A stretch of DNA of 63,674 nt, the filler included, from Octopus bimaculoides (lineage: Eukaryota): the NCBI RefSeq assembly GCF_001194135.2. It is 6 parts of 5 records of this genome, joined end to end, with 100 filler letters (N's around TTAATTAATTAA, not from the genome) between each part and the next. Parts side by side here need not be neighbours in the genome. Positions count along the whole stretch, not along the records: positions 26,654 to 37,236 come from NC_068988.1; 5 more parts are not named here. One strand, written 5' to 3'. Positions 26,654 through 37,236 of this stretch are shown here, piece by piece. Positions within the stretch are counted from its first letter, which is position 1, and each line of letters begins with the position of its first letter. The notes beneath the pieces are model-generated. The model made no database searches, was not told where the DNA came from, and worked only from the letters and a program-made list of their open reading frames with translations. The translations under genes were made by a program, and so were the position numbers.

Positions 26654-26841
26654 TTTATGAACTGTAACCATCTACATTTTTTGTTTAACAAAATCCAGAA
26701 AAATCTTTACCACCAAATCTTATAAATTCCTCAACTTCGCATATGGAAATCGAGTTGAGTTTTTTTAGACATTATAAAGAAAAAAAGCGCGTCATATATA
26801 ACATGAAGTGTTGTACAATATTAAACGCTGTGATAAATTAC

Positions 26842-26931
26842 CGTAAGTGTTGACGAGGGAGTTATTACGAAACAGCCACCGACATCGATTCCATGAGATT
26901 CAGTCGTTAGTCGATTTAGGAAAACTAATAT
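26842..26931 (-). CDS. Gustatory-receptor-like (GRL) paralog A, penultimate exon
   Basis: Acceptor tctctttttctgtattacag and donor ACG|gtaatt. The 90-nt phase 0-0 exon reads ILVFLNRLTTESHGIDVGGCFVITPSSTLT. The final exon would fall beyond the contig end at 26654. Confidence 0.8.
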
Positions 26932-27976
26932 CTGTAATACAGAAAAAGAGAGACAACATGAACGGGGATTGTGTAAAAAGAAACGTTTACCTTGTCTGTG
27001 GCTGCACAGAATGCACATTTGTTGAATAAATTTCAACGATGGTAACTTGCGTTGATGCACAAATAATTTGCGAATACCAGCACATGGACATGTTTACCTG
27101 AACAAACGCGGGAATATGGATTAACTGCCAGTTTTTATTTAGTCAACACTATCCTATCAATAATTCACAAATCCGGACTCAGTGTTTTGTTTCTCGAAGC
27201 AATAGATATCGCCTTCCGTCTATTAGTGTTTGTATTACCCAGCTATCATGGGCTTAAAAAGAGACTTATATGGAAAGTATCTCGTCATACATCAAAGCGA
27301 TCACACGACGTTTGCATTCGTTGATTCAACAAAAAACCATCAGATTAGAAAATTACTCAGAGGACGAGATTTTATGAAAATAAATACCTATGTTAACGTT
27401 AGCAATTAACGGTTATGTCATTTTCATCAAGAATTATCCTTCTAATTTTTATATAATGCAACGTGAAATAATTTTATAAGATATATATTCATATGGCTTA
27501 TAGACTTTTATAGGATATCAGTTTATGGCTGATTTAGTGAAATTCTAATGTGTTTACTAAAATTTACTAAAACCTGCTACGCGCATTATGAAACCACGAA
27601 AGAAACGTTTANNNNNNNNNNACACACACACACACATATGCATATATACATTTCATATAAATACATATGTGTGTGCAATCATGTATGAAGCCATTTATTC
27701 TTATATATTAAACGGGAAAACAATAAGAATTAGAAGAAATATTGGCGCAAGGTTCGGGAGTTTCGTTGATTACACCGACACTATTGCTTGAATGGTAATT
27801 ATTTTATCTACCCCAAAAGGATGAAAGGCAAAGACAATGCGGGTGGCATTTCAACTCAAATAAAGGCATGAAATCGTGCTAAACATTTTGCCCTGCGTAG
27901 AAACAGCCTTCTTTTAAAGAGATATATCAAAAATATATATTAAAAGTAAGACGACGAGATCATAAAGTTTGCTTAC

Positions 27977-28045
27977 CTTTGCAATAACTTCCTGTTTTAT
28001 GTCCTGAAATTGCATAAAATGAATACTTTGTGTAATACTGTGAAC
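27977..28045 (-). CDS. GRL paralog A, antepenultimate exon
   Basis: Acceptor ttttctatttcacatctag and donor AAG|gtaagc. The 69-nt phase 0-0 exon reads VHSITQSIHFMQFQDIKQEVIAK. Confidence 0.75.
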
Positions 28046-28091
28046 CTAGATGTGAAATAGAAAATGATAATAATAATAATAATAATAATAA

Positions 28092-28545
28092 TGAAAGGTC
28101 ACAGAAAACAAGAAAGCAACCATACTCTGGGATATGCTAATACACACAGATAGAGAAATTAAGGCCAAATAGGCCAGATATAGTTGTCAGAGATCGTAAA
28201 GAAAAAAAATGCTTTCTAATTGATGTATCAATACCAGCAGATGACAACGTTTCCCTAAAAGAAATGGAGAAACTTTCAAAATACAAAGACCTGGAAATAG
28301 AGGTAACTCGAATGTGGAATCTAAAAACAGAAACAATTCCTATCATAGTAGGTGCCTTAGGTATAATAAGAAAATATTCAGACAAATACATAACAAAAAC
28401 ACCAGGACTTACAAATATATATAACATACAGAAAATTGCACTACTGGGTACTGCACACATTCTACACAAAACACTTTCAATACAGTAAACATAAGAGCAT
28501 CACAGCGCTCGGTAGTGAAGTGAAAGCACTGAATAATAATAATAA
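28092..28545 (+). mobile_element. R4/Dong-like 3' fragment (RLE family 1)
   Basis: TILWDMLIHTDREIKA/RPDIVVRDRKEKKCFLIDVSIPADDNVSLKEMEKLSKYKDL..., with a +1 frameshift near 28173. Flanked on both sides by (AAT)n. Confidence 0.9.
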
Positions 28546-28550
28546 AACTA

Positions 28551-28642
<92 letters not shown>

Positions 28643-28685
28643 CAACAACAACAACAACAATAATAATGATGATGATGATGATAAT

Positions 28686-28957
28686 ACCTCGGGTATGTGC
28701 TGTGGCTTGTTGTGACGCTCTTATTTGTTCTGTACTGAATGTTTTACATAGGATGTGTGCTGTGCCTACTAGTGCTATTTTCCGTATTAAATATACACTT
28801 GTTAGTCCTGGTACTTTTGTTATGTATCCATCTGAATATTTTTTTATCATATCTATTGCGCCTACTACGATAGGAATTGTTTCTATTTTTAGACTCCACA
28901 TTCGAGTTAGCTCTATTTCCAGATACATCGATTAGAAGCATTTTTGACGTCTTCTTC

Positions 28958-28960
<3 letters not shown>
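28686..28960 (-). mobile_element. R4/Dong-like 3' fragment, internally deleted, tail-to-tail with the previous copy
   Basis: LEIELTRMWSLKIETIPIVVGAIDMIKKYSD on the minus strand. The IPADD...KD segment is missing. Confidence 0.85.
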
Positions 28961-29017
<57 letters not shown>

Positions 29018-29699
29018 GGAAGGGGTGTGAAAATTGCCAAAATTGCGAGAGTAGCCGGTATCACTCTATCTGTAGACCTGTGAGTCGTAGAGAAAGAACT
29101 GGAGCGGGCACTTGCTCCTGGGGTGTCAGGGAAATCTAGAACAGTGGGGTTCGTCAATTATCCCTAGAGACCTTCCTGTATCAGGAGGGCCACGTCTGTA
29201 TCATCCCCCACGTCAATTTTTTTTTTAACCTTTGTATGCATATCTCTCTTCACACTCAGTGTATACAGTGTATACTTATTTGTTTTTATCATTTTTTCTT
29301 TTATAATTCCATCTTTCACCAAATGTCTACTAGAAAAAGATGGATCAGTAAAAGTGTGGCAACACATATGTCAGTGCCACAGCATTGACATATTTTACGA
29401 TTTGGCGCAAGTAAAAGATAAAANNNNNNNNNNNNNNNNNNNNNNNNNNNNNNNNNNNNNNNNNNNNNNNNNNNNNNNNNNNNNNNNNNNNNNNNNNNNN
29501 NNNNNNNNNNNNNNNNNNNNNNNATATATAATTAAAACAGTGGGGTAAAAAATTAGATATTTATTAATAGCACATTAACAGTCCACCTAGTAGTCTCCTT
29601 TATATATACATGTGTGTGTGTGTATGTGTGTGTGTGTGTGTGGCGTTAGCGACAGTGATGTAGAAGTCATTTTGCACGCCAGGAAAACAGTGTTGTTCA

Positions 29700-31103
29700 A
29701 TAGAAGTTCGACTTGGCTTAAGCAATCCAAACCCATGGTCTCCTTTGATGTAGCAATGGAGGTCTAGGACAGCGCTGATCTATGCGATCTCACCGTGTTG
29801 TATATTCTTAATACCAGTAAGAAAAAGTTCCCCTCTTTCCTTTCTGTTCTCTACGGAGATGACACCCTGGCCATCTCTAGGGGAGCTAACGGTCACACAC
29901 TAGACAATCTTAGGAAAGATCTAATTAGCACACTTGCCTCCATGGGATTAAAAATCTCCATCGGGACCAACCTCACCACCGCGAACTTCTTAGACATCAC
30001 GCTCAACATGGGCTTCGGCACATACAGGCCCTACTGCAAGCCTAATGAGAAGCTAAAGTACATTAATACAGCCTCGTGTCACCCACCCACCGTGTTCAAA
30101 AACCTGGTGAAGTATGTTAGTATGAGAATCAGGGAGCGCATCGCCTACATGCCGGGCCCCAACAACCGCAGAAGGAATCGCCACAGAAATATCATTTGGT
30201 TTGCGCCATCTATGAAGTCGAGATACTGGCCGACCCTAGCAACAGCAGCAACATCAGCAGATCCCCTAACGGTGACCACAGAAGCAGGAAGCGCGAATAG
30301 AACTAACAGCACCATGGCCAGAGACAACAACATCAACGACAGCAGCAACTTCCTTAAGGGATACATCTACGGCAGCAGGCCCGACATTGCCCGACAGCAA
30401 CAGCTTCCTTAACGGATGCATCTGCAGCAGCGGGCCCTACAGTGCCTATAGCAAAAGCAGCAGTACTATCGCCAGCAATAACACCAATAGCAGGGACAAC
30501 AGCAACGTCAGTATCCCTAACGGAAATAGCAGCAGAGATATCGCCAATGACATCTAGAGCAGCGATGACAGCATGTCCACCAATGATGATAGCAATAATA
30601 ACAACAACGGCACCTTCGCCAACACCGGCAGTGACGGCACCAACACCATCGCCACCTTCAATGACGCCAACACCAAAAATGCCAGAACCAACACCACCAA
30701 AACCAGCGACGCCAACACCTGACCACGGAGGTACATCAGCTGTTCCGGGAATTCGTTCAAATAACGCATCTCCAATCACATATACTCATTCAGGATACCA
30801 GAATGGAGATTTGTCAAGTCATTAACCAGCCACGTATGGCAGCTAGTAGACGACGGGATTCCGCACACGATATCATGGAGAATCCTAGAGAATTTAGGCC
30901 TGTACATTAACGGGACCAAACGCTGTAAATTATGCATAGCGGAACAGGCGATGATCCTCGACCAAGGGAAAATCTCGTAGCCTATTGGAAGCCATGCAAT
31001 AGCAAGGCCACTGGTGATCGATAGTCAAAGGGAGACATTCGCTTTTGTTGACATTCAGTAACGAACTCATTTCCTCCAGCATATTCTAAAGAGGCAACGA
31101 GTT
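29700..31103 (+). mobile_element. Penelope-like element: RT and GIY-YIG remnants with a low-complexity insert
   Basis: RT core/thumb VLYGDDTLAI...NFLDITLNM...YRPYCKPNEKLKYINTASCHPP. Endonuclease tail SHVWQLVDDGIPHTISWRIL...GTKRCKLCIAE at about 30830-30960. Confidence 0.85.
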
Positions 31104-31260
31104 TTGTCATCTGCTGGTATTGATACATCAATTAGAAAGCATTTTTTCTTTCTTCGTGATCTCTGACAACTATATCTGGCCTATTGGCCTTAATTTCTCT
31201 ATCTGTGTGTATTGATTGGCATATCCCAGAGTGTGGTTGCTTTCTCGTTTTATGTGACCT
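31104..31260 (-). mobile_element. R4/Dong-like fragment, duplicated counterpart of 28092-28247
   Basis: Reverse complement of the 5' part of the 28092 copy, truncated where the Penelope-like element ends. Confidence 0.85.
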
Positions 31261-31264
31261 TTTA

Positions 31265-31335
<71 letters not shown>

Positions 31336-31352
31336 TTCTATTTCACATCTAG

Positions 31353-31421
31353 GTTCACAGTATTACACAAAGCATTCATTTTATGCAATTTCAGGACATA
31401 AAACAGGAAGTCATTGCAAAG
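31353..31421 (+). CDS. GRL paralog B, antepenultimate exon
   Basis: Acceptor ttttctatttcacatctag and donor AAG|gtaagc. Reads VHSITQSIHFMQFQDIKQEVIAK, with two differences from paralog A, both synonymous. Confidence 0.75.
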
Positions 31422-31825
31422 GTAAGCAAACTTTATGATCTCGTCGTCTTACTTTTAAAATATATTTTTAATATTTCTCTTTAAAAGAAGGCTGTTTCTA
31501 CGCAGGGCAAAATGTTTAGCACGATTTCATGTCTTTATTTGAATTCACAGACCACCCGCAATGTCTTTGCCTTTTATCTTTTTGGGGTAGATAAAATAAT
31601 TACCATTCAATCAATAGTGTCGGTTTAATGGACGAAACACCCGAACCTTGCGCCAATATTTCTTCTAATTTCCCTTTTAAAATATAAGAATAAATGGCTT
31701 CATACATGATTGCACACACATATGTAGTTATATGAAATATATATATGCATATATATGTGTGTGTATCTCTCTCTCTCTCTTACTCTCTCTCTCTCTCCCT
31801 CTCTCTCTCTCTCTCNNNNNNNNNN

Positions 31826-31870
<45 letters not shown>

Positions 31871-32563
31871 CTCTTATGAGTGGTTATTTTCCCCGTCACT
31901 GTATATACATATGTGAGCTTATGCAGCTTCAAGAGATTTAACTTTATTTCTGTCCACGTACAATTCAGCACTCTCAGACACAATTATTAACGATTAAACG
32001 TTTCTTTCGTGGTTTCATAATGCGCGTAGCAGGTTTTATCAAATTTTAGTAAACACATTAGAATTTCACTAAATCAGCCATAAATTGATATCCTATAAAA
32101 GTCTATAAGCCATATGAATATATATCTTATAAAATTATTTCACGGTGCATTATATAAAAATTAGAAAGATAATTCTTGATGAAAATGACATAACCGTTCA
32201 TTGCTAACATTAATATAGGTATTTATTTCCATAAAATCTCGTCCTCTGAGTAATTTTCTAATCTGATGGTTTTTTGTTGAATCAACGAATGCAAACGTCG
32301 TGTGATCGCTTTGATGTATGACGAGATACTTTTCATGTAAGTCTCTTTTTAAAGCCCATGATAGCTGGGTAATACAAAGACTAATAGACGGAAAGCGATA
32401 TCTATTGCTTCGAGAAACAAAACATTGAGTCGGGATTTGTGAATTATTGATAGCATAATGTTGACTGAATAAAAACTAGTGTTTAATCCATATTCCCGCG
32501 TAGTATTCGCAAATTATTTGCGCATCAACGCAAGTTACCATCGTTGAAATTATTCAAAAAATG

Positions 32564-33148
32564 GGATCTTTTTTACAACGGGGGCCACATTTTTCATTAA
32601 CGAAACACTTTGAAACTTTGAACACTGGTAGAATGTGTCATATAAAACATCTTTTTCTCTTAGTCTTCTTTAATAAAAAAAAGAAATCCATAAGTTATTC
32701 CATGTTAAAGTTGTATTTCTGTAATTTCAACCAATCACTGACGTCCATTCAGCCGATATACATTAAGTGCCGACTACATAAACAAACGATTCTGAAACAA
32801 TTAACCCTAACCCTAACCCTAACCCTAACCCTACGGTTAGGGTTAGGGTTAAGGTTAAAGCAAATTTAAAATGAAAAAAGCAAATAAAACGAAGGTATGG
32901 AGATTAAATACGCTTTACACCGCTTAATCAGCCAAAGGAGTAAATGTAAACAACTGAATACTTGTCAGTGATTGGTTGAAATTATCGAAATAAGACAATT
33001 TTTTACATGAAATAAATTCGAATACAAAAATATTTTTCTGTTCTATAACACAAAATAGATAAGTATACGAAGTTTGAAAGTCTTTCCGTACCAAAAACAC
33101 TACGTAAAACATTAATGAAAAATGTGGCCCCCGTTTTAAAATAGATCC
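32564..33148. mobile_element. Foldback MITE with GGATCT termini and 8-bp TSD, copy 2, in a GRL intron
   Basis: TIR GGATCT(T/A)TTTTA(C/A)AACGGGGGCCACATTTTTCATTAA. AAAAAATG is duplicated at 32556-32563 and 33149-33156. The empty site is visible at about 27015-27022. Confidence 0.92.
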
Positions 33149-33240
33149 AAAAAATGTGCATTCTGTGCAGCCACAGACAAGGTAAACGTTTCTATTTACA
33201 CAATCCCCGTTCATGTTGTCTCTCTTTTTCTGTATTACAG

Positions 33241-33330
33241 ATACTAGTTTTCCTAAATCGACTAACGACTGAATCGCATGGAATCGATGTTGGTGGCTGT
33301 TTCGTAATAACTCCCTCGTCAACACTTACG
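33241..33330 (+). CDS. GRL paralog B, penultimate exon
   Basis: Same splice sites and peptide as 26842-26931, with three differences, all synonymous. Confidence 0.82.
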
Positions 33331-33563
33331 GTAATTTATCACAGCGTTTAATATTTTACAACACTTCATGTTATATATCACTCGTTTTTTTCTTTATAAT
33401 GATTTGGTGGTAAAGATTTTTCTGGCTTTTGTAAAAAAAAAATTGTACATGATTACAGTTCATAAAATGTATTTTATCAAAATATAATAACCCTCTTTCT
33501 AAATCATTCTATGAATTCATTGAAAATAACAGCTATTTATTTTTTCTCTTTTCTTCTTTTCAG

Positions 33564-33620
33564 ATGATAGGAAGTTTTATTACTTACATACTGGTTGTGA
33601 TCCAGACAAAATCTTTATAG
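33564..33620 (+). CDS. GRL paralog B, terminal exon with the TM7 signature
   Basis: Strong acceptor tttttctcttttcttcttttcag. Phase 0, reads MIGSFITYILVVIQTKSL-stop and contains TYhhhhhQ. Confidence 0.82.
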   Translation: MIGSFITYILVVIQTKSL

Positions 33621-33629
33621 CTGCCCTCT

Positions 33630-34270
33630 CTTCCTTATTATACATTTCCAATGGTAAATTAAATACGAAGCTCAACTTAACAACATTACCTCACCAATAC
33701 ATGAATTCGGACCACGTCCCTACAAACCTTTCTGAAGCAAGATTCTGGAAAAGATAGAAAATAGCGTGATACTGTATCGAGTTCCAGCCTCTCGTACCAG
33801 CGTTAGGTTGATTATGTAATCTTTGTTATCAGACACACATGCTGCTATTGATTTTCAACTAATTTACTTACAACTGACCATCATCTTTTGTCGAAAAGAA
33901 TATTTTTCACTTTGATTTTTCTCAATATATATTGTATTTTCCTTCCCACTCATCTGGGCAACATGTTTTTCGTTTCTCTCATTTTCAACAATATATAAGA
34001 CCGATACATCACTGGATGTATATTATAAATGTTCAACCTTACATTACGTAGTTTCATTTTTGGCTATATTTTCTTGAAATAAAATATCATGATGAATCTA
34101 GTTACTGAATTCACTTATTCATTTTACTTAATTAAAAGCCTGTACATCAGGGTAAAGAAAATTATGTCAATATAAAGCTATTTTATTTCAGGAATTACTC
34201 ATGTGTCTTATTGGATGGAATTGATATGTTTTTGAAGAAGAGCTTTGCTCGAAACGTAAAACACCCTTTC
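33630..34270 (+). mobile_element. Degenerate Penelope-like remnant ending in a hammerhead-like motif
   Basis: LYISNGKLNTKL...HQYMN resembles a PLE RT thumb. 34227-34263 reads UGUUU-UUGAAGA-A-GAGC-UUU-GCUC-GAAAC-GUA-AAACA (first core C mutated). Confidence 0.5.
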
Positions 34271-35149
34271 TTTCCTTCTCTGGTAAAAATATCCTGCTCT
34301 CAGTATTTGCACACCTTTGAAACTGCTAGCATCCATTTTCCCTCAATATGGAGCTTTGCATAACCATTCGCTCCTTCCTTTCACCGTGCTTTACTACCTA
34401 ACCATCCTTTCTGATCATGGATTTACTTAAAGACCCGATCAAACTGGATTTAATTGAACTCTCCCGCCCTCTTGGACATAATGAACCACAACAAATATTG
34501 ATGAGGAACTATCTTCCGCTGTCTAGCCTATATATCTCCGAGGACGGAATACCCAACTTACAGAGTCTTCGCTTGATATGATGCTCCAGTAGCTGGAATA
34601 TCTCAGAAACAGCTGTCAGAGGCTAATTTTACTATTTTTTTTTACTATTAGATATGTTGCTAACTTTAGATTGAATTGAATGAAATAAAATGTCCTTGTA
34701 ATGCCTTGCCTACTTTTTTGCCTTTCCTCACGATTTTCACCTGCACTTAATGGCTCAAAGATAAACGACCTTTAGACGTTTTGAACAAGATAATCACATG
34801 ACCACAACGTCAGCTGCTATTCTAGCTGACATTTTGGTGACACACCAATCTAAGCAATAGTTTAAGGAAGACGCCAAATTCCCCTGTGTTGACTTCACGG
34901 GGCTCTACGTCCCTCTCACACATAATCTCAATGCATTTTTCCACAGCAAAATCTATGTCTATAGATGGGTATCTATATATATGAATGTAATTTCACTCTT
35001 CCCATCTATTGACATAGATGTTGCCTCCTTAAACTAAGCTATGACAGTAACTATCTAGACAACCATGATCTTAGTAGATTCTGCTCCACCAGGTCACAGA
35101 GGAGAAGGCCACCAACCATCACCTCAGCAGTGAAGAAAAGCACTGCAGA

Positions 35150-35850
35150 ACGCTGGAGTGGCTGGACAATACACACCTAAGACCCTGACAACAAAAATCA
35201 GGTGAAAAGAATGATTGGATATGCAATAGGCGCTAGCATGAGAACCACATTGAAGAACCACATAGTAAAGTTTAACAGGAAATTATACATGCGGGTTCAA
35301 GGTGCAGCCATTGGTGTCGGTGTAGCTGGAGATGTGGCCAACCTTTTCATGACCAGGTGGGACAGAAAACTCAAACAATTCTTGCAGAACAGTCCACAAC
35401 TCTTTTACTTTATTGTAGGTAAGTAGAAGACATTTATATTCTAGTTGAGATCATTTCGAGAAACGGTGATGCAGAAACCGAGTGGAAGGTAATGGAGAGC
35501 ATCCAGTATGTAGCTAACATCATCGACCAAAGTATCAAGGTAACTATAGATTACCGCACTTGGCAACCTAACAATAGACACCCTGTCCTTGATACTGAAC
35601 TTTGATTAGAGACTGTGAACAACAGAATACAGCTCCTCCACTCTTATTACATGAAACCCATAGCTTCAAAATGCATTGTTCACAAAAACGCAGCTTTGAC
35701 ACTACATGAAAATCAACATACCTACAGCAGACTTAATATAATGAACAACATGTCCCCACTATGCAAACCCTATCAATCGAAGAGACACTTACAGAAATTC
35801 ATGCACCGCATGCAATTCTCTCGATATGATCAGAAAGACACGCACACATA
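35150..35850 (+). mobile_element. Penelope-like reverse transcriptase remnant
   Basis: TLKNHIVKFNRKLYMRVQGAAIGVGVAGDVANLFMTRWD...PVLDTEL...LLHSYYMKPIASKCIVHKNAA, broken by stops and frameshifts. Confidence 0.8.
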
Positions 35851-35945
35851 CACTTTTAATCTTTTACTTGTTACAATCATGCAGTTGTGGTCATGCTGGA
35901 GCACCACCATGGTTTTCTGATTTCCTCAGTCTGGAGTGTTTCACA

Positions 35946-36600
35946 TCACCACTTGTGTGTGTACCTATTTCCCAGATGTTGGTCCATTTGGTTTATGAGG
36001 GCGTTTGATTCCGCTGCCCTCGTCTGCACCTCATGTTGGGCTGTTGGTTCATCCAGTATTGTGGAGAGGAGGATGTCCAGTTCCTTTTTGAAGACATCTA
36101 CTTCCACCTTATGCTGATTTCTTAATTTTTGTGGCAGAGCATTGAAGAGATGTGGGGCTTCAAACCCTTGACTATTGCAGTACCTGGTCCTGAATTTAGA
36201 TGGAGTGGATGGTACCTTTGGTACAATACAATGACGGCCAGTTCTGGCATTTGAATAACACTCAATGCCGAAGTTGGGTAGAAACCCTTCTACGATTTTC
36301 CACATGTATATTACTGCATATCTCTTACACCTTCGCTCCAGGGAGTAAATTAATAGTTTTCTCAGCTTGTCCATGTAGCTTATCCGTTGCACTGTTCCAA
36401 TCCTTTTTAGTGTAGTGGCATTGGACTGCCTCAAGCTCCGCTGTTAGTTTGGCACTATGTGGTGACCATGACTGGGGGCAGAAGTCCAGGTGGGTGACAA
36501 CAAAGGTTCTCCACAGGGTCAACATAGTTTCTTAGTCTCTTGTCTTGAAGGACCTCCGTATCCATCCTGATAGTGGACTGCACTTTGCTGCCACCTTGCT
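35946..36600 (-). mobile_element. CR1/L2-like LINE ORF2 3' end
   Basis: LTLWRTFVVTHLDFCPQSWSP...SYMDKLRKLLIYSLERRCKRYAVIYMWKIVEG...HLFNALPQKLR...FKKELD. Confidence 0.85.
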
Positions 36601-36726
36601 AATGTGCTTATAAAATATTGCGTCATTACACATATTGATATCTAATATATACATCTAAGTGGAATCAATTAACATGCAAAATGCGAGTTATCTACAATAC
36701 GTCAGTAGCTGAATAGCTCTAGCATG

Positions 36727-36774
<48 letters not shown>

Positions 36775-37236
36775 ACTATCTCTATCTGTCTGTCTTTCTA
36801 TCTATCTATCTACATTTCTACAATGACAATATTGGTCAAGGTTACCGTGATCTTTTCCGTAGGCTTTTCTTTCCACGGCTAAACCTAAACTGTCCCCGCT
36901 TTTTACACGAGAACATTGCCGTGGTACACGATCCCTATTGATCGTTTTCTTTTTTTCTTTCTCGATCCCTTTTAACCGAACTCTCTGTCTATCTAGCTAT
37001 CTATCTATCTATCTATCTATCTATCTCTATGGACGGACGGTAGACGTGTCGGCTCCGTAAGTTTTGCCTTTTTCATGTTTTAAAAAGTTTGTTTGTAAAG
37101 TTTATTTTATATACAAAGTTGTATAACAACTTGTATACTATCTGGTGCAAGTTTTTTGCGACAGAAATCTGCCCTGTGTGGCACATTTCCAGGATATAAA
37201 AACCAATTTCGGCTTTCTAGCCATTTTTTTTTTTTT

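What the first reader, a model, noticed from the sequence alone, without database searches (positions are those of the whole stretch)
26842..33620. Hidden pair of gustatory-receptor-like (GRL, 7TM ion channel) chemoreceptor genes
Seen: three short + strand exons (31353-31421, 33241-33330, 33564-33620) with canonical splice sites splice in phase 0 to give VHSITQSIHFMQFQDIKQEVIAK|ILVFLNRLTTESHGIDVGGCFVITPSSTLT|MIGSFITYILVVIQTKSL*. A minus-strand copy has the first two exons (27977-28045, 26842-26931). Established: TYhhhhhQ(F) in TM7 and phase-0 introns near the C-terminus are signatures of the insect GR/OR and GRL (7tm_7) superfamily, which has divergent members in molluscs. Inference: these are ligand-gated-channel-type chemoreceptor candidates in a cephalopod, separate from the nAChR-derived chemotactile receptors and GPCRs. 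To my knowledge they are little characterised in this group. The exons are short and buried in repeats, so annotation could easily miss them.
Basis: partly seen in the sequence, partly recalled or inferred. Interest (0 to 1): 0.85.

Follow-up and report, generated by a model that had tools for sequence, protein, structure and literature searches.

The report
Shared tail exons of octopus GRL gene
The three short exons are real: they are the shared pore-helix tail of an insect-type gustatory-receptor-like channel gene in an octopus, already annotated as an uncharacterised protein, and the "second gene" is only an inverted copy of that tail whose reality rests on an unverified scaffold join.

Summary
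The five exons translate exactly as written, have AG/GT splice sites and join in phase 0. The 71-aa peptide is 99% identical to the C-terminus of RefSeq XP_052825893.1, an uncharacterised Octopus bimaculoides protein (LOC106880719 isoform X3).

The peptide alone is below Pfam's cut-off (7tm_7, E 0.014). The family assignment still holds:
- All ten relatives tested pass the 7tm_7 cut-off.
- An octopus-only profile matches non-cephalopod GRL/GR proteins at 99.7% hhalign probability.
- The AlphaFold model of a 408-aa paralogue matches only insect OR/Orco/GR structures.

The right contig is collinear with O. sinensis LOC118764607. That locus has seven large alternative 5' exons (six intact, TM1-6), followed by one set of three small exons. 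This is the Drosophila Gr39a design, so the window holds only the shared TM7 cassette. No large exon lies in the piece.

The minus copy is a 92-97% identical inverted duplicate of that cassette and is absent at this place in O. sinensis. It joins the plus copy across a 100-N scaffold gap, exactly where synteny breaks. Its five exonic differences are all synonymous. Whether it is a real duplicate or a misplaced contig cannot be decided here.

Verdict: a new member of a known kind, of moderate interest.

The parts
31353..31421 (+). Small shared exon 1 (23 codons, VHSITQSIHFMQFQDIKQEVIAK). It encodes the cytoplasmic end of TM6 and the start of TM7a, and includes the family-invariant His.
   Evidence: AG/GT, phase 0. 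Aligns to P0005 335-357 and O. sinensis L003 75234-75302. Invariant H336 in alignment A1.
33241..33330 (+). Small shared exon 2 (30 codons, ILVFLNRLTTESHGIDVGGCFVITPSSTLT). It encodes TM7a, the loop and the start of TM7b.
   Evidence: Amino acids are 30/30 identical to O. sinensis, with only synonymous differences.
33564..33620 (+). Small shared exon 3 (18 codons plus TAG, MIGSFITYILVVIQTKSL*). It encodes pore-lining TM7b with the motif TYILVVIQ(T).
   Evidence: The only difference from O. sinensis is TAG versus TAA. T, Y and Q are invariant in alignment A1.
27977..28045 (-). Inverted duplicate of small exon 1.
   Evidence: Two synonymous differences from the plus copy, with identical splice sites.
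26842..26931 (-). Inverted duplicate of small exon 2.
   Evidence: Three synonymous differences from the plus copy.
26654..28247 (-). Left arm of the inverted repeat, cut by the edge of the piece. It contains 10 N at 27612-27621 inside the intron.
   Evidence: 92-97% identity in ungapped blocks to 31104-33466. It maps to the same single place in O. sinensis as the right arm.
31104..33466 (+). Right arm of the inverted repeat. It contains 10 N at 31816-31825 in a (CT)n run and a 585-bp MITE at 32564-33148 that the left arm lacks.
29424..29523 (.). 100-N scaffold join between the contig with the minus copy and the contig that is collinear with O. sinensis. By synteny the nearest large TM1-6 exon should lie about 3 kb beyond this point.
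   Evidence: In L003 the last large exon ends at 70966 and the collinear block starts at 74072.
33621..34180 (+). Sequence downstream of the stop codon (probable 3' UTR), conserved with O. sinensis.
   Evidence: window 33470-34180 matches L003 81173-81871 at 84%.
31393..31394 (+). In-frame internal AG acceptor (tttcag|GAC) inside small exon 1. It is the junction used by O. sinensis isoform X4.
   Evidence: P0027 reads ...LHAA|DIKPEVVAK. The sequence is shown.

Best explanation
The plus-strand exons are the three small 3' exons of a gustatory-receptor-like (GRL, 7TM ion channel, Pfam 7tm_7) locus. That locus is the Octopus bimaculoides counterpart of O. sinensis LOC118764607 and is annotated in RefSeq as LOC106880719.

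In the orthologous locus, several large alternative 5' exons lie upstream over about 65 kb. Each has its own ATG and a phase-0 GTAAGT or GTGAGT donor, and each encodes TM1-TM6. The first acceptor downstream of them is that of small exon 1.

Inferred mechanism: one large exon at a time is spliced to the shared three-exon cassette. The cassette supplies the end of TM6, TM7a and the pore-lining TM7b. The products would be channel subunits of about 390-400 aa, with different ligand-facing bodies and one common pore helix. This is how Drosophila Gr39a and Gr28b work.

The minus-strand exons are a recent inverted duplicate of the cassette only. Whether it serves a second locus cannot be decided from this piece.

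Shown here: the exons, their splice sites and conservation, family membership, and the exon-array design in the orthologue and in a neighbouring O. bimaculoides locus.

Inferred: use of that design at this locus, channel function, and a chemosensory role.
For: Identity and annotation:
- The 71-aa product equals the C-terminus of XP_052825893.1 apart from one I/L difference.

Family membership:
- Exhaustive phmmer gave 22 relatives. The full-length ones are 405-429 aa and the match lies at their C-terminal end.
- All 10 relatives scanned pass the 7tm_7 gathering score, at 27-112 bits.
- An octopus-only profile against a non-cephalopod GRL/GR profile gave hhalign probability 99.7%, E 1.3e-26, over 193 columns.
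- A mixed family profile hits Gr64a (1.9e-9), Gr43a and Orco among PDB sequences.
- The AF2 model of paralogue P0005 has pLDDT 73 and pTM 0.71. Its top 22 Foldseek hits are all insect OR/Orco/GR (TM 0.47-0.69). The next hit has E 0.42.

Synteny:
- Window 29641-36954 is collinear with L003 74072-87883.

Exon-array design:
- L003 carries 7 large exons, 6 of them intact at 318-331 codons, each ATG to GT(A/G)AGT. They are followed by one set of three small exons. Conceptual products are 389-402 aa.
- The neighbouring O. bimaculoides locus L001 has at least 10 large exons with no stop in the matched stretch (nine in open frames of 360-402 codons, one truncated at 222) plus three small exons.
- RefSeq isoforms P0003 and P0026 share the 71-aa tail but have different N-terminal halves.
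- The Gr39a design is described in PMC2204066.

Selection:
- 5 of 5 exonic differences between the two copies are synonymous (P about 7e-4). Exons 2 and 3 differ from O. sinensis only synonymously.
Against: - No large exon lies in the piece. The array is therefore inferred for this locus from the orthologue and a neighbouring locus.
- The 71-aa peptide alone is sub-threshold in Pfam, at 15.1 bits against a cut-off of 26.6.
- Of three full-length products tested (two O. sinensis conceptual isoforms and one joining an O. sinensis large exon to the window's 71-aa tail), one scored 21.2 bits and the other two had no 7tm_7 hit at E <= 0.1.
- An octopus-only profile finds no PDB sequence. The link to insect GRs runs through intermediate GRLs and through structure.
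- The only RefSeq product with these exons is a truncated 110-aa model.
- None of my six conceptual O. sinensis isoforms exists in the protein collection.
- I could examine no transcript reads.
- The last motif residue is T, not F/W.
Confidence: 0.8

Rival explanations
1. The minus copy is an assembly artefact. It would be a contig holding an allelic or paralogous version of the cassette, placed and oriented wrongly by the scaffolder next to the true locus. Only one cassette would then exist here.
For: - The two copies meet across a 100-N join, and synteny with O. sinensis breaks exactly there.
- By synteny, the place occupied by the left contig should hold the last large exon.
- O. sinensis has one copy at this place.
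- The same assembly is riddled with gaps.
- The inner ends of both arms lie in a transposon and an (AAT)n run.
Against: - The arms differ by 3-8% in ungapped blocks and by a 585-bp MITE with its own target-site duplication. That is several-fold above the under-1% heterozygosity reported for octopus genomes (PMC13218726).
- RefSeq's product has Leu where the plus copy has Ile in exon 3. This suggests a second exon-3 copy exists in the assembly.
Confidence: 0.4
2. One reading: two independent, functional GRL genes lie head to head, each with its own complete coding sequence.
For: - Both copies keep intact frames and splice sites, and all five differences are synonymous. Polarised by O. sinensis, three fall on the plus lineage and two on the minus lineage.
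- Three adjacent GRL loci exist in O. sinensis, and several exist in O. bimaculoides.
Against: - The 5' ends of both copies point into the same 3.3 kb plus gap, which is filled with transposon fragments and holds no TM1-6 exon.
- Both arrays would have to sit inside the gap.
- The duplicate covers only the cassette as far as can be seen.
Confidence: 0.15
3. The locus is decaying in O. bimaculoides. On this view the cassette is a relic no longer joined to working large exons.
For: - RefSeq's model is only 110 aa. Its large-exon remnant is shorter than the O. sinensis equivalent.
- One O. sinensis large exon already carries a stop codon.
Against: - Only synonymous changes have accumulated in exons 2-3 since the split from O. 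sinensis and between the two copies. Splice sites are conserved.
- The truncated model may simply reflect gaps in the assembly.
Confidence: 0.1

Closest known systems
Drosophila Gr39a (also Gr28b, Gr23a): alternatively spliced gustatory receptor loci
   Same: Several large 5' exons each encode six TM helices, each with its own start codon and donor. They are followed by three small shared exons that encode TM7 and the C-terminus (PMC2204066). The octopus orthologue has the same layout, including pseudo-exons.
   Different: - There are more large exons: 7 in LOC118764607 and at least 10 in O. bimaculoides LOC106880487.
- Introns of 2-20 kb are packed with transposons.
- Sequence identity to insect GRs is about 12-15%.
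- Mutually exclusive splicing is shown only by gene models, not by reads.
- Whether the design is inherited or convergent is unknown.
Lophotrochozoan and other non-insect GRLs (for example Potamilus A0AAE0VJ26 'Gustatory receptor', Lineus XP_064628567.1, Solemya, Lytechinus)
   Same: - They were retrieved by phmmer with the window's product, at E values from 8e-8 to 9e-4.
- They share the C-terminal block ...FL.RL....IG....G.F.I.......G...TY...V.Q.
- They have the same length class.
   Different: The cephalopod proteins end the motif with Q-T rather than Q-F. They score much lower against Pfam 7tm_7.
Insect OR/Orco/GR cryo-EM structures (MhOR5 7LIC, Orco 6C70, Gr64a 8JME, Gr43a 8JM9, BmGr9 8VC2)
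   Same: The predicted fold of octopus paralogue P0005 matches these and nothing else. The window's exons map to the best-predicted part, TM6 end to TM7b, where block-mean pLDDT is 83-92.
   Different: This is a prediction for a paralogue that is 44% identical over the shared region. Tetramer formation, pore and ligand are untested.
Octopus chemotactile receptors (CRs, nicotinic-receptor-derived)
   Same: They are candidate ionotropic chemoreceptors of octopus, and they are expanded in clusters (PMC11526382).
   Different: The fold is unrelated (Cys-loop pentamers). CRs have demonstrated ligands and sucker expression, whereas the GRLs have none.

Membership tests
GR/GRL superfamily (7TM ion channels, Pfam PF08395 7tm_7) | Significant sequence similarity to established GR/GRL proteins and to no other family | tested here: met
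   - Peptide alone: 7tm_7 E 0.014, below the cut-off, placed at profile positions 324-367 of 370.
- Its phmmer relatives all pass the cut-off.
- hhalign, octopus-only profile against non-cephalopod GRL/GR: 99.7%, E 1.3e-26.
- Mixed profile hits Gr64a, Gr43a and Orco only.
- Caveat: an octopus-only profile finds no PDB sequence.
GR/GRL superfamily (7TM ion channels, Pfam PF08395 7tm_7) | Protein of about 350-500 residues (criteria of PMC7746228) | tested here: inconclusive
   Only 71 codons lie in the window. The feature is met for the O. sinensis orthologue's conceptual isoforms (389-402 aa) and for paralogue P0005 (408 aa).
GR/GRL superfamily (7TM ion channels, Pfam PF08395 7tm_7) | Seven TM helices in the OR/GR fold | tested here: met
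   Tested on paralogue P0005, not on the window's own product. AF2 pTM is 0.71. The top 22 Foldseek PDB hits are all OR/Orco/GR, with E 1.5e-6 to 1.3e-4.
GR/GRL superfamily (7TM ion channels, Pfam PF08395 7tm_7) | Intracellular N-terminus (topology inverted relative to GPCRs) | not tested
   No topology predictor was run. It is implied only by the fold match.
GR/GRL superfamily (7TM ion channels, Pfam PF08395 7tm_7) | TM7 motif (T/S)Y-hhhhh-(Q/K/E)(F/W) | tested here: met
   The window reads T-Y-ILVVI-Q-T, so three of four positions are met. The last is Thr in all cephalopod members and Phe in most others.
GR/GRL superfamily (7TM ion channels, Pfam PF08395 7tm_7) | [quoted passage not shown] | tested here: met
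   Three phase-0 introns bound the three small exons. The last lies 6 codons before TY. Exact positional equivalence with insect introns was not checked.
GR/GRL superfamily (7TM ion channels, Pfam PF08395 7tm_7) | Ligand-gated cation channel activity or chemosensory expression | not testable with these tools
   No expression or physiology data are available here.
Gr39a/Gr28b-type alternatively spliced receptor locus | Several large 5' exons, each with its own ATG and donor, encoding TM1-6 | tested here: inconclusive
   None lies in the piece. The feature is met in the syntenic O. sinensis locus (7 exons, 6 intact). It is also met in the neighbouring O. bimaculoides locus (at least 10).
Gr39a/Gr28b-type alternatively spliced receptor locus | Three small shared exons encoding TM7 and the C-terminus | tested here: met
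   Window 31353-31421, 33241-33330 and 33564-33620. There is one such set per locus in L001, L002 and L003.
Gr39a/Gr28b-type alternatively spliced receptor locus | Transcripts joining different large exons to the same small exons | tested here: inconclusive
   The evidence is at gene-model level only. P0003 and P0026 (LOC118764608 X3 and X2) differ in their N-terminal 70 aa and share the 71-aa tail. A 389-aa product starts upstream of L003 and ends at the same stop codon. No reads were examined.

The most novel reading that the evidence does not exclude
Octopus GRL loci may be exon-array 'receptor generators'. Seven to more than ten alternative TM1-6 exons per locus would be spliced onto a single three-exon pore cassette. 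A cluster of a few loci would then yield dozens of ionotropic receptor subunits. That would be a second, so far undescribed, ionotropic chemoreceptor repertoire in cephalopods beside the nicotinic-derived CRs. It would use the same design as insect Gr39a/Gr28b, and the inverted second cassette in this window would be a real copy kept by selection.
Probability: 0.35. Interest if true: 0.65.

Novelty: new member of a known kind. Interest (0 to 1): 0.45.

Why it matters
Octopus contact chemosensation is currently explained by nicotinic-derived chemotactile receptors and GPCRs. I found no paper that treats cephalopod GRLs.

This locus shows that octopuses keep a cluster of very divergent GRL genes. 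Their isoform diversity (large alternative exons on one pore cassette) is almost entirely missing from current annotation.

If these genes are expressed in suckers, lips or the olfactory organ, they would add a receptor family to cephalopod sensory biology. They would also give a non-arthropod case for asking whether the Gr39a-type design is ancestral or convergent.

The window itself adds only the cassette and a doubtful duplicate.

Tried and rejected
- Word-index protein search with the 71-aa peptide found only one protein. It missed O. sinensis proteins that share a 48-aa exact run, so its silence is not informative (one search compared).
- Profile searches with alignments A1 and A2 were swamped by 8000 candidates and added little.
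- Look-up of P0001's encoding contig returned 'not on record', so the O. bimaculoides locus itself could not be fetched. The same happened for P0003 and P0026.
- Exact look-ups of ORFs spanning exon 2 of each copy were meant to find independent read assemblies. They found nothing.
- None of six conceptual O. sinensis isoforms is in the protein collection.
- tblastn of all relatives against the piece found no exon beyond the five known ones.
- Pfam on full-length products (two O. sinensis conceptual isoforms and one O. sinensis large exon joined to the window's tail) was sub-threshold or empty. Pfam on the 110-aa RefSeq product gave no 7tm_7 hit.
- An octopus-only profile against PDB sequences gave nothing.
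- Rfam and tRNA scans of the piece were empty.
- Transposon ORFs gave only a weak RVT_1 hit.
- Robertson 2015 and Albertin 2015 are not held.
- The species behind the Logan contig SRR11869391 (P0028) could not be identified.
- Rejected: chance ORFs, because of conservation and homology. Also rejected: a transposon-borne exon set, because there is one set per locus and it is syntenic.

Full report
**Observation.**
The piece (26654-37236) was read in full. Each is bounded by AG and GT (the last by AG and a TAG stop), and all junctions are phase 0.

**Gaps.**
- The two 10-N gaps (27612-27621 and 31816-31825) lie in microsatellite sequence inside intron 1 of the minus and the plus copy.
- Their flanks are collinear with the O. 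sinensis orthologue, in the same order and orientation. They break no reading frame.
- Judged from the other copy, the left gap hides about 230 bp rather than 10.
- The 100-N gap (29424-29523) is different. It separates the contig carrying the minus copy from the contig carrying the plus copy.
- Collinearity with O. sinensis starts only to its right, at 29641. The 400 bp to its left match nothing in the related loci.
- The head-to-head arrangement is therefore a scaffolding inference.

**Inverted repeat.**
- The arm 26654-28247 (cut by the edge of the piece) is the reverse complement of 31104-33466. Ungapped blocks are 92-97% identical.
- The right arm carries a 585-bp MITE (32564-33148) that the left arm lacks. 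It has 37-nt terminal inverted repeats and an 8-bp target-site duplication, AAAAAATG.
- Both arms include the same transposon fragment set in an (AAT)n run directly upstream of exon 1. O. sinensis has the microsatellite there but not the transposon.
- The duplication is therefore younger than the species split.
- The minus copy's third exon would lie about 100 bp beyond the edge of the piece.

**What the exons encode.**
- Alone, the 71-aa peptide gives only sub-threshold Pfam hits. These are 7tm_7 (E 0.014) and Trehalose_recp (E 0.032), both correctly placed at the C-terminal end of the profiles.
- The peptide is 99% identical to the C-terminus of XP_052825893.1. That is 'uncharacterized protein LOC106880719 isoform X3' of Octopus bimaculoides, 110 aa.
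- An exhaustive phmmer search with that protein found 22 relatives. They come from O. sinensis, O. bimaculoides, Sepia, bivalves, a nemertean and a sea urchin.
- The full-length relatives are 405-429 aa, and the match lies at their very C-terminus.
- All ten relatives scanned pass the 7tm_7 gathering score, at 27-112 bits.
- One O. bimaculoides paralogue is already named 'Gustatory receptor' in UniProt.
- An octopus-only profile aligns to a profile of non-cephalopod GRLs plus an insect Gr28b at 99.7% probability, E 1.3e-26, over 193 columns.
- A mixed profile hits only Gr64a, Gr43a, ORs and Orco at E up to 0.01 among PDB sequences.
- An AlphaFold2 model of the 408-aa O. sinensis paralogue P0005 has pLDDT 73 and pTM 0.71.
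- Its 22 best PDB matches are exclusively insect OR, Orco and GR structures (TM 0.47-0.69). The next hit has E 0.42.

**Caveats on the family assignment.**
- The subfamily is very divergent.
- The full-length products tested reach at most 21 bits on 7tm_7.
- An octopus-only profile finds no PDB sequence by itself.
- The TM7 motif reads TYxxxxxQT, with Thr where most members have Phe.

**Gene architecture.**
- No TM1-6 exon lies in the piece.
- The right contig (29641-36954) is collinear with O. sinensis LOC118764607 (L003 74072-87883).
- That locus has seven large exons spread over about 61 kb. Six are intact at 318-331 codons. Each starts at an ATG and ends at a phase-0 GTAAGT or GTGAGT donor. 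One carries a stop codon.
- They are followed by a single set of three small exons, which are the orthologues of the window's exons.
- Conceptual products are 389-402 aa.
- LOC118764606 has two large exons and three small ones.
- The neighbouring O. bimaculoides gene LOC106880487 has at least ten large exons with no stop in the matched stretch, then three small exons. A further small-exon set lies on the opposite strand.
- In the P0005 model the large exon covers TM1-TM6. The three small exons cover the end of TM6, TM7a and TM7b, which is the best-predicted part.
- RefSeq models give annotation-level support. LOC118764608 isoforms X2 and X3 have different N-terminal halves on the same 71-aa tail. 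A 389-aa product of LOC118764607 begins upstream of L003 and ends at the same stop codon.
- None of my six conceptual full-length isoforms is in the 15-billion-protein collection. The isoform diversity is therefore largely unannotated.

**Selection.**
- The two copies differ at 5 of 159 exonic bases, and all five differences are synonymous. Polarised by O. sinensis, three changes fall on the plus lineage and two on the minus lineage.
- About 23% of random changes would be synonymous, so P is about 7e-4.
- Against O. sinensis, exons 2 and 3 differ only synonymously. Exon 1 has four replacements. Splice sites are conserved.

**Status of the minus copy.**
For an artefact:
- The join is a 100-N gap, exactly where synteny breaks.
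- By synteny the last large exon should lie where the left contig sits.
- O. sinensis has one copy at this place.
- The assembly is gap-rich.

For a real duplicate:
- The arms differ by 3-8% and by a MITE insertion. That is well above the under-1% heterozygosity reported for octopus genomes (PMC13218726).
- The RefSeq protein has Leu where the plus copy has Ile in exon 3. This points to a second exon-3 copy in the assembly.

I cannot decide between these. As placed, neither copy has room for its own TM1-6 exons between them.

**Comparison with what is known.**
- GRLs are known in molluscs and other non-arthropods (PMC7746228).
- Alternatively spliced GR loci are known in insects.
- These exons are annotated in RefSeq. 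The finding is therefore a new, poorly annotated member of a known kind.
- I found no paper on cephalopod GRLs or on their exon-array organisation. That is the part worth following up with transcript data.
- A chemosensory role and channel activity are inferences from family membership only.

Noticed in passing
window 32564-33148: A 585-bp MITE is present in the plus copy only. It has 37-nt terminal inverted repeats (95%) and an 8-bp target-site duplication, AAAAAATG (32556-32563 and 33149-33156). Its centre is a palindrome of telomere-like repeats, (CCCTAA)n facing (TTAGGG)n, at 32799-32866.
   Followed up: partly
window 28094-28520, 28690-28940 (inverted), 31104-31263: Fragments of one transposon family are each embedded in (AAT)n/(ATT)n arrays. 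Their 3' ORF reads ...KYKDLEIEVTRMWNLK...PIIVGALG.... Many copies occur in the related octopus loci. The element may insert preferentially into AAT microsatellites.
   Followed up: partly
window 29641-30206: A reverse-transcriptase fragment (YGDD motif, weak RVT_1 hit) lies at the same place upstream of small exon 1 in O. sinensis (L003 74072-74593, 80.7% identity). The insertion therefore predates the species split.
   Followed up: partly
window 31393-31395: An in-frame AG acceptor (tttcag|GAC) lies inside small exon 1. O. sinensis isoform X4 (P0027) uses the equivalent site. That isoform drops 14 residues, including the family-invariant His.
   Followed up: no
L001 10001-80898 (O. bimaculoides CM046608.1): LOC106880487 holds at least ten large GRL exons with no stop in the matched stretch (nine of them in open frames of 360-402 codons) ahead of one set of three small exons (69542-69622, 72531-72632, 75926-75985). 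RefSeq lists products of only 273 and 187 aa.
   Followed up: partly
L001 83537-84005, minus strand: This is a third, more divergent copy of small exons 2 and 3 (VLVFLNRLTTKSYGIDVGG... / MMGSFITYILVVIQTKE*), on the opposite strand. No gene was called there. Its exon 1 would fall in an N run.
   Followed up: no
L003 56570-57550; reversed fragments at L003 49294-49665 and 37796-38153: One large exon of O. sinensis LOC118764607 carries an in-frame stop. Two partial large-exon copies lie in reverse orientation. This points to exon birth and death within the array, as described for Gr39a.
   Followed up: no
window 35516-36654: This block downstream of the gene is collinear with O. sinensis (86.9%). 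It contains a 162-codon minus-strand ORF with no Pfam hit and matches several 67-69% identical copies elsewhere in L002/L003. It looks like an old interspersed repeat.
   Followed up: no
window 36728-36810 and 36990-37030: These are (CTAT)n tetranucleotide microsatellites. The first is partly conserved with O. sinensis (36654-36815 matches L003 85801-85960 at 92%).
   Followed up: no
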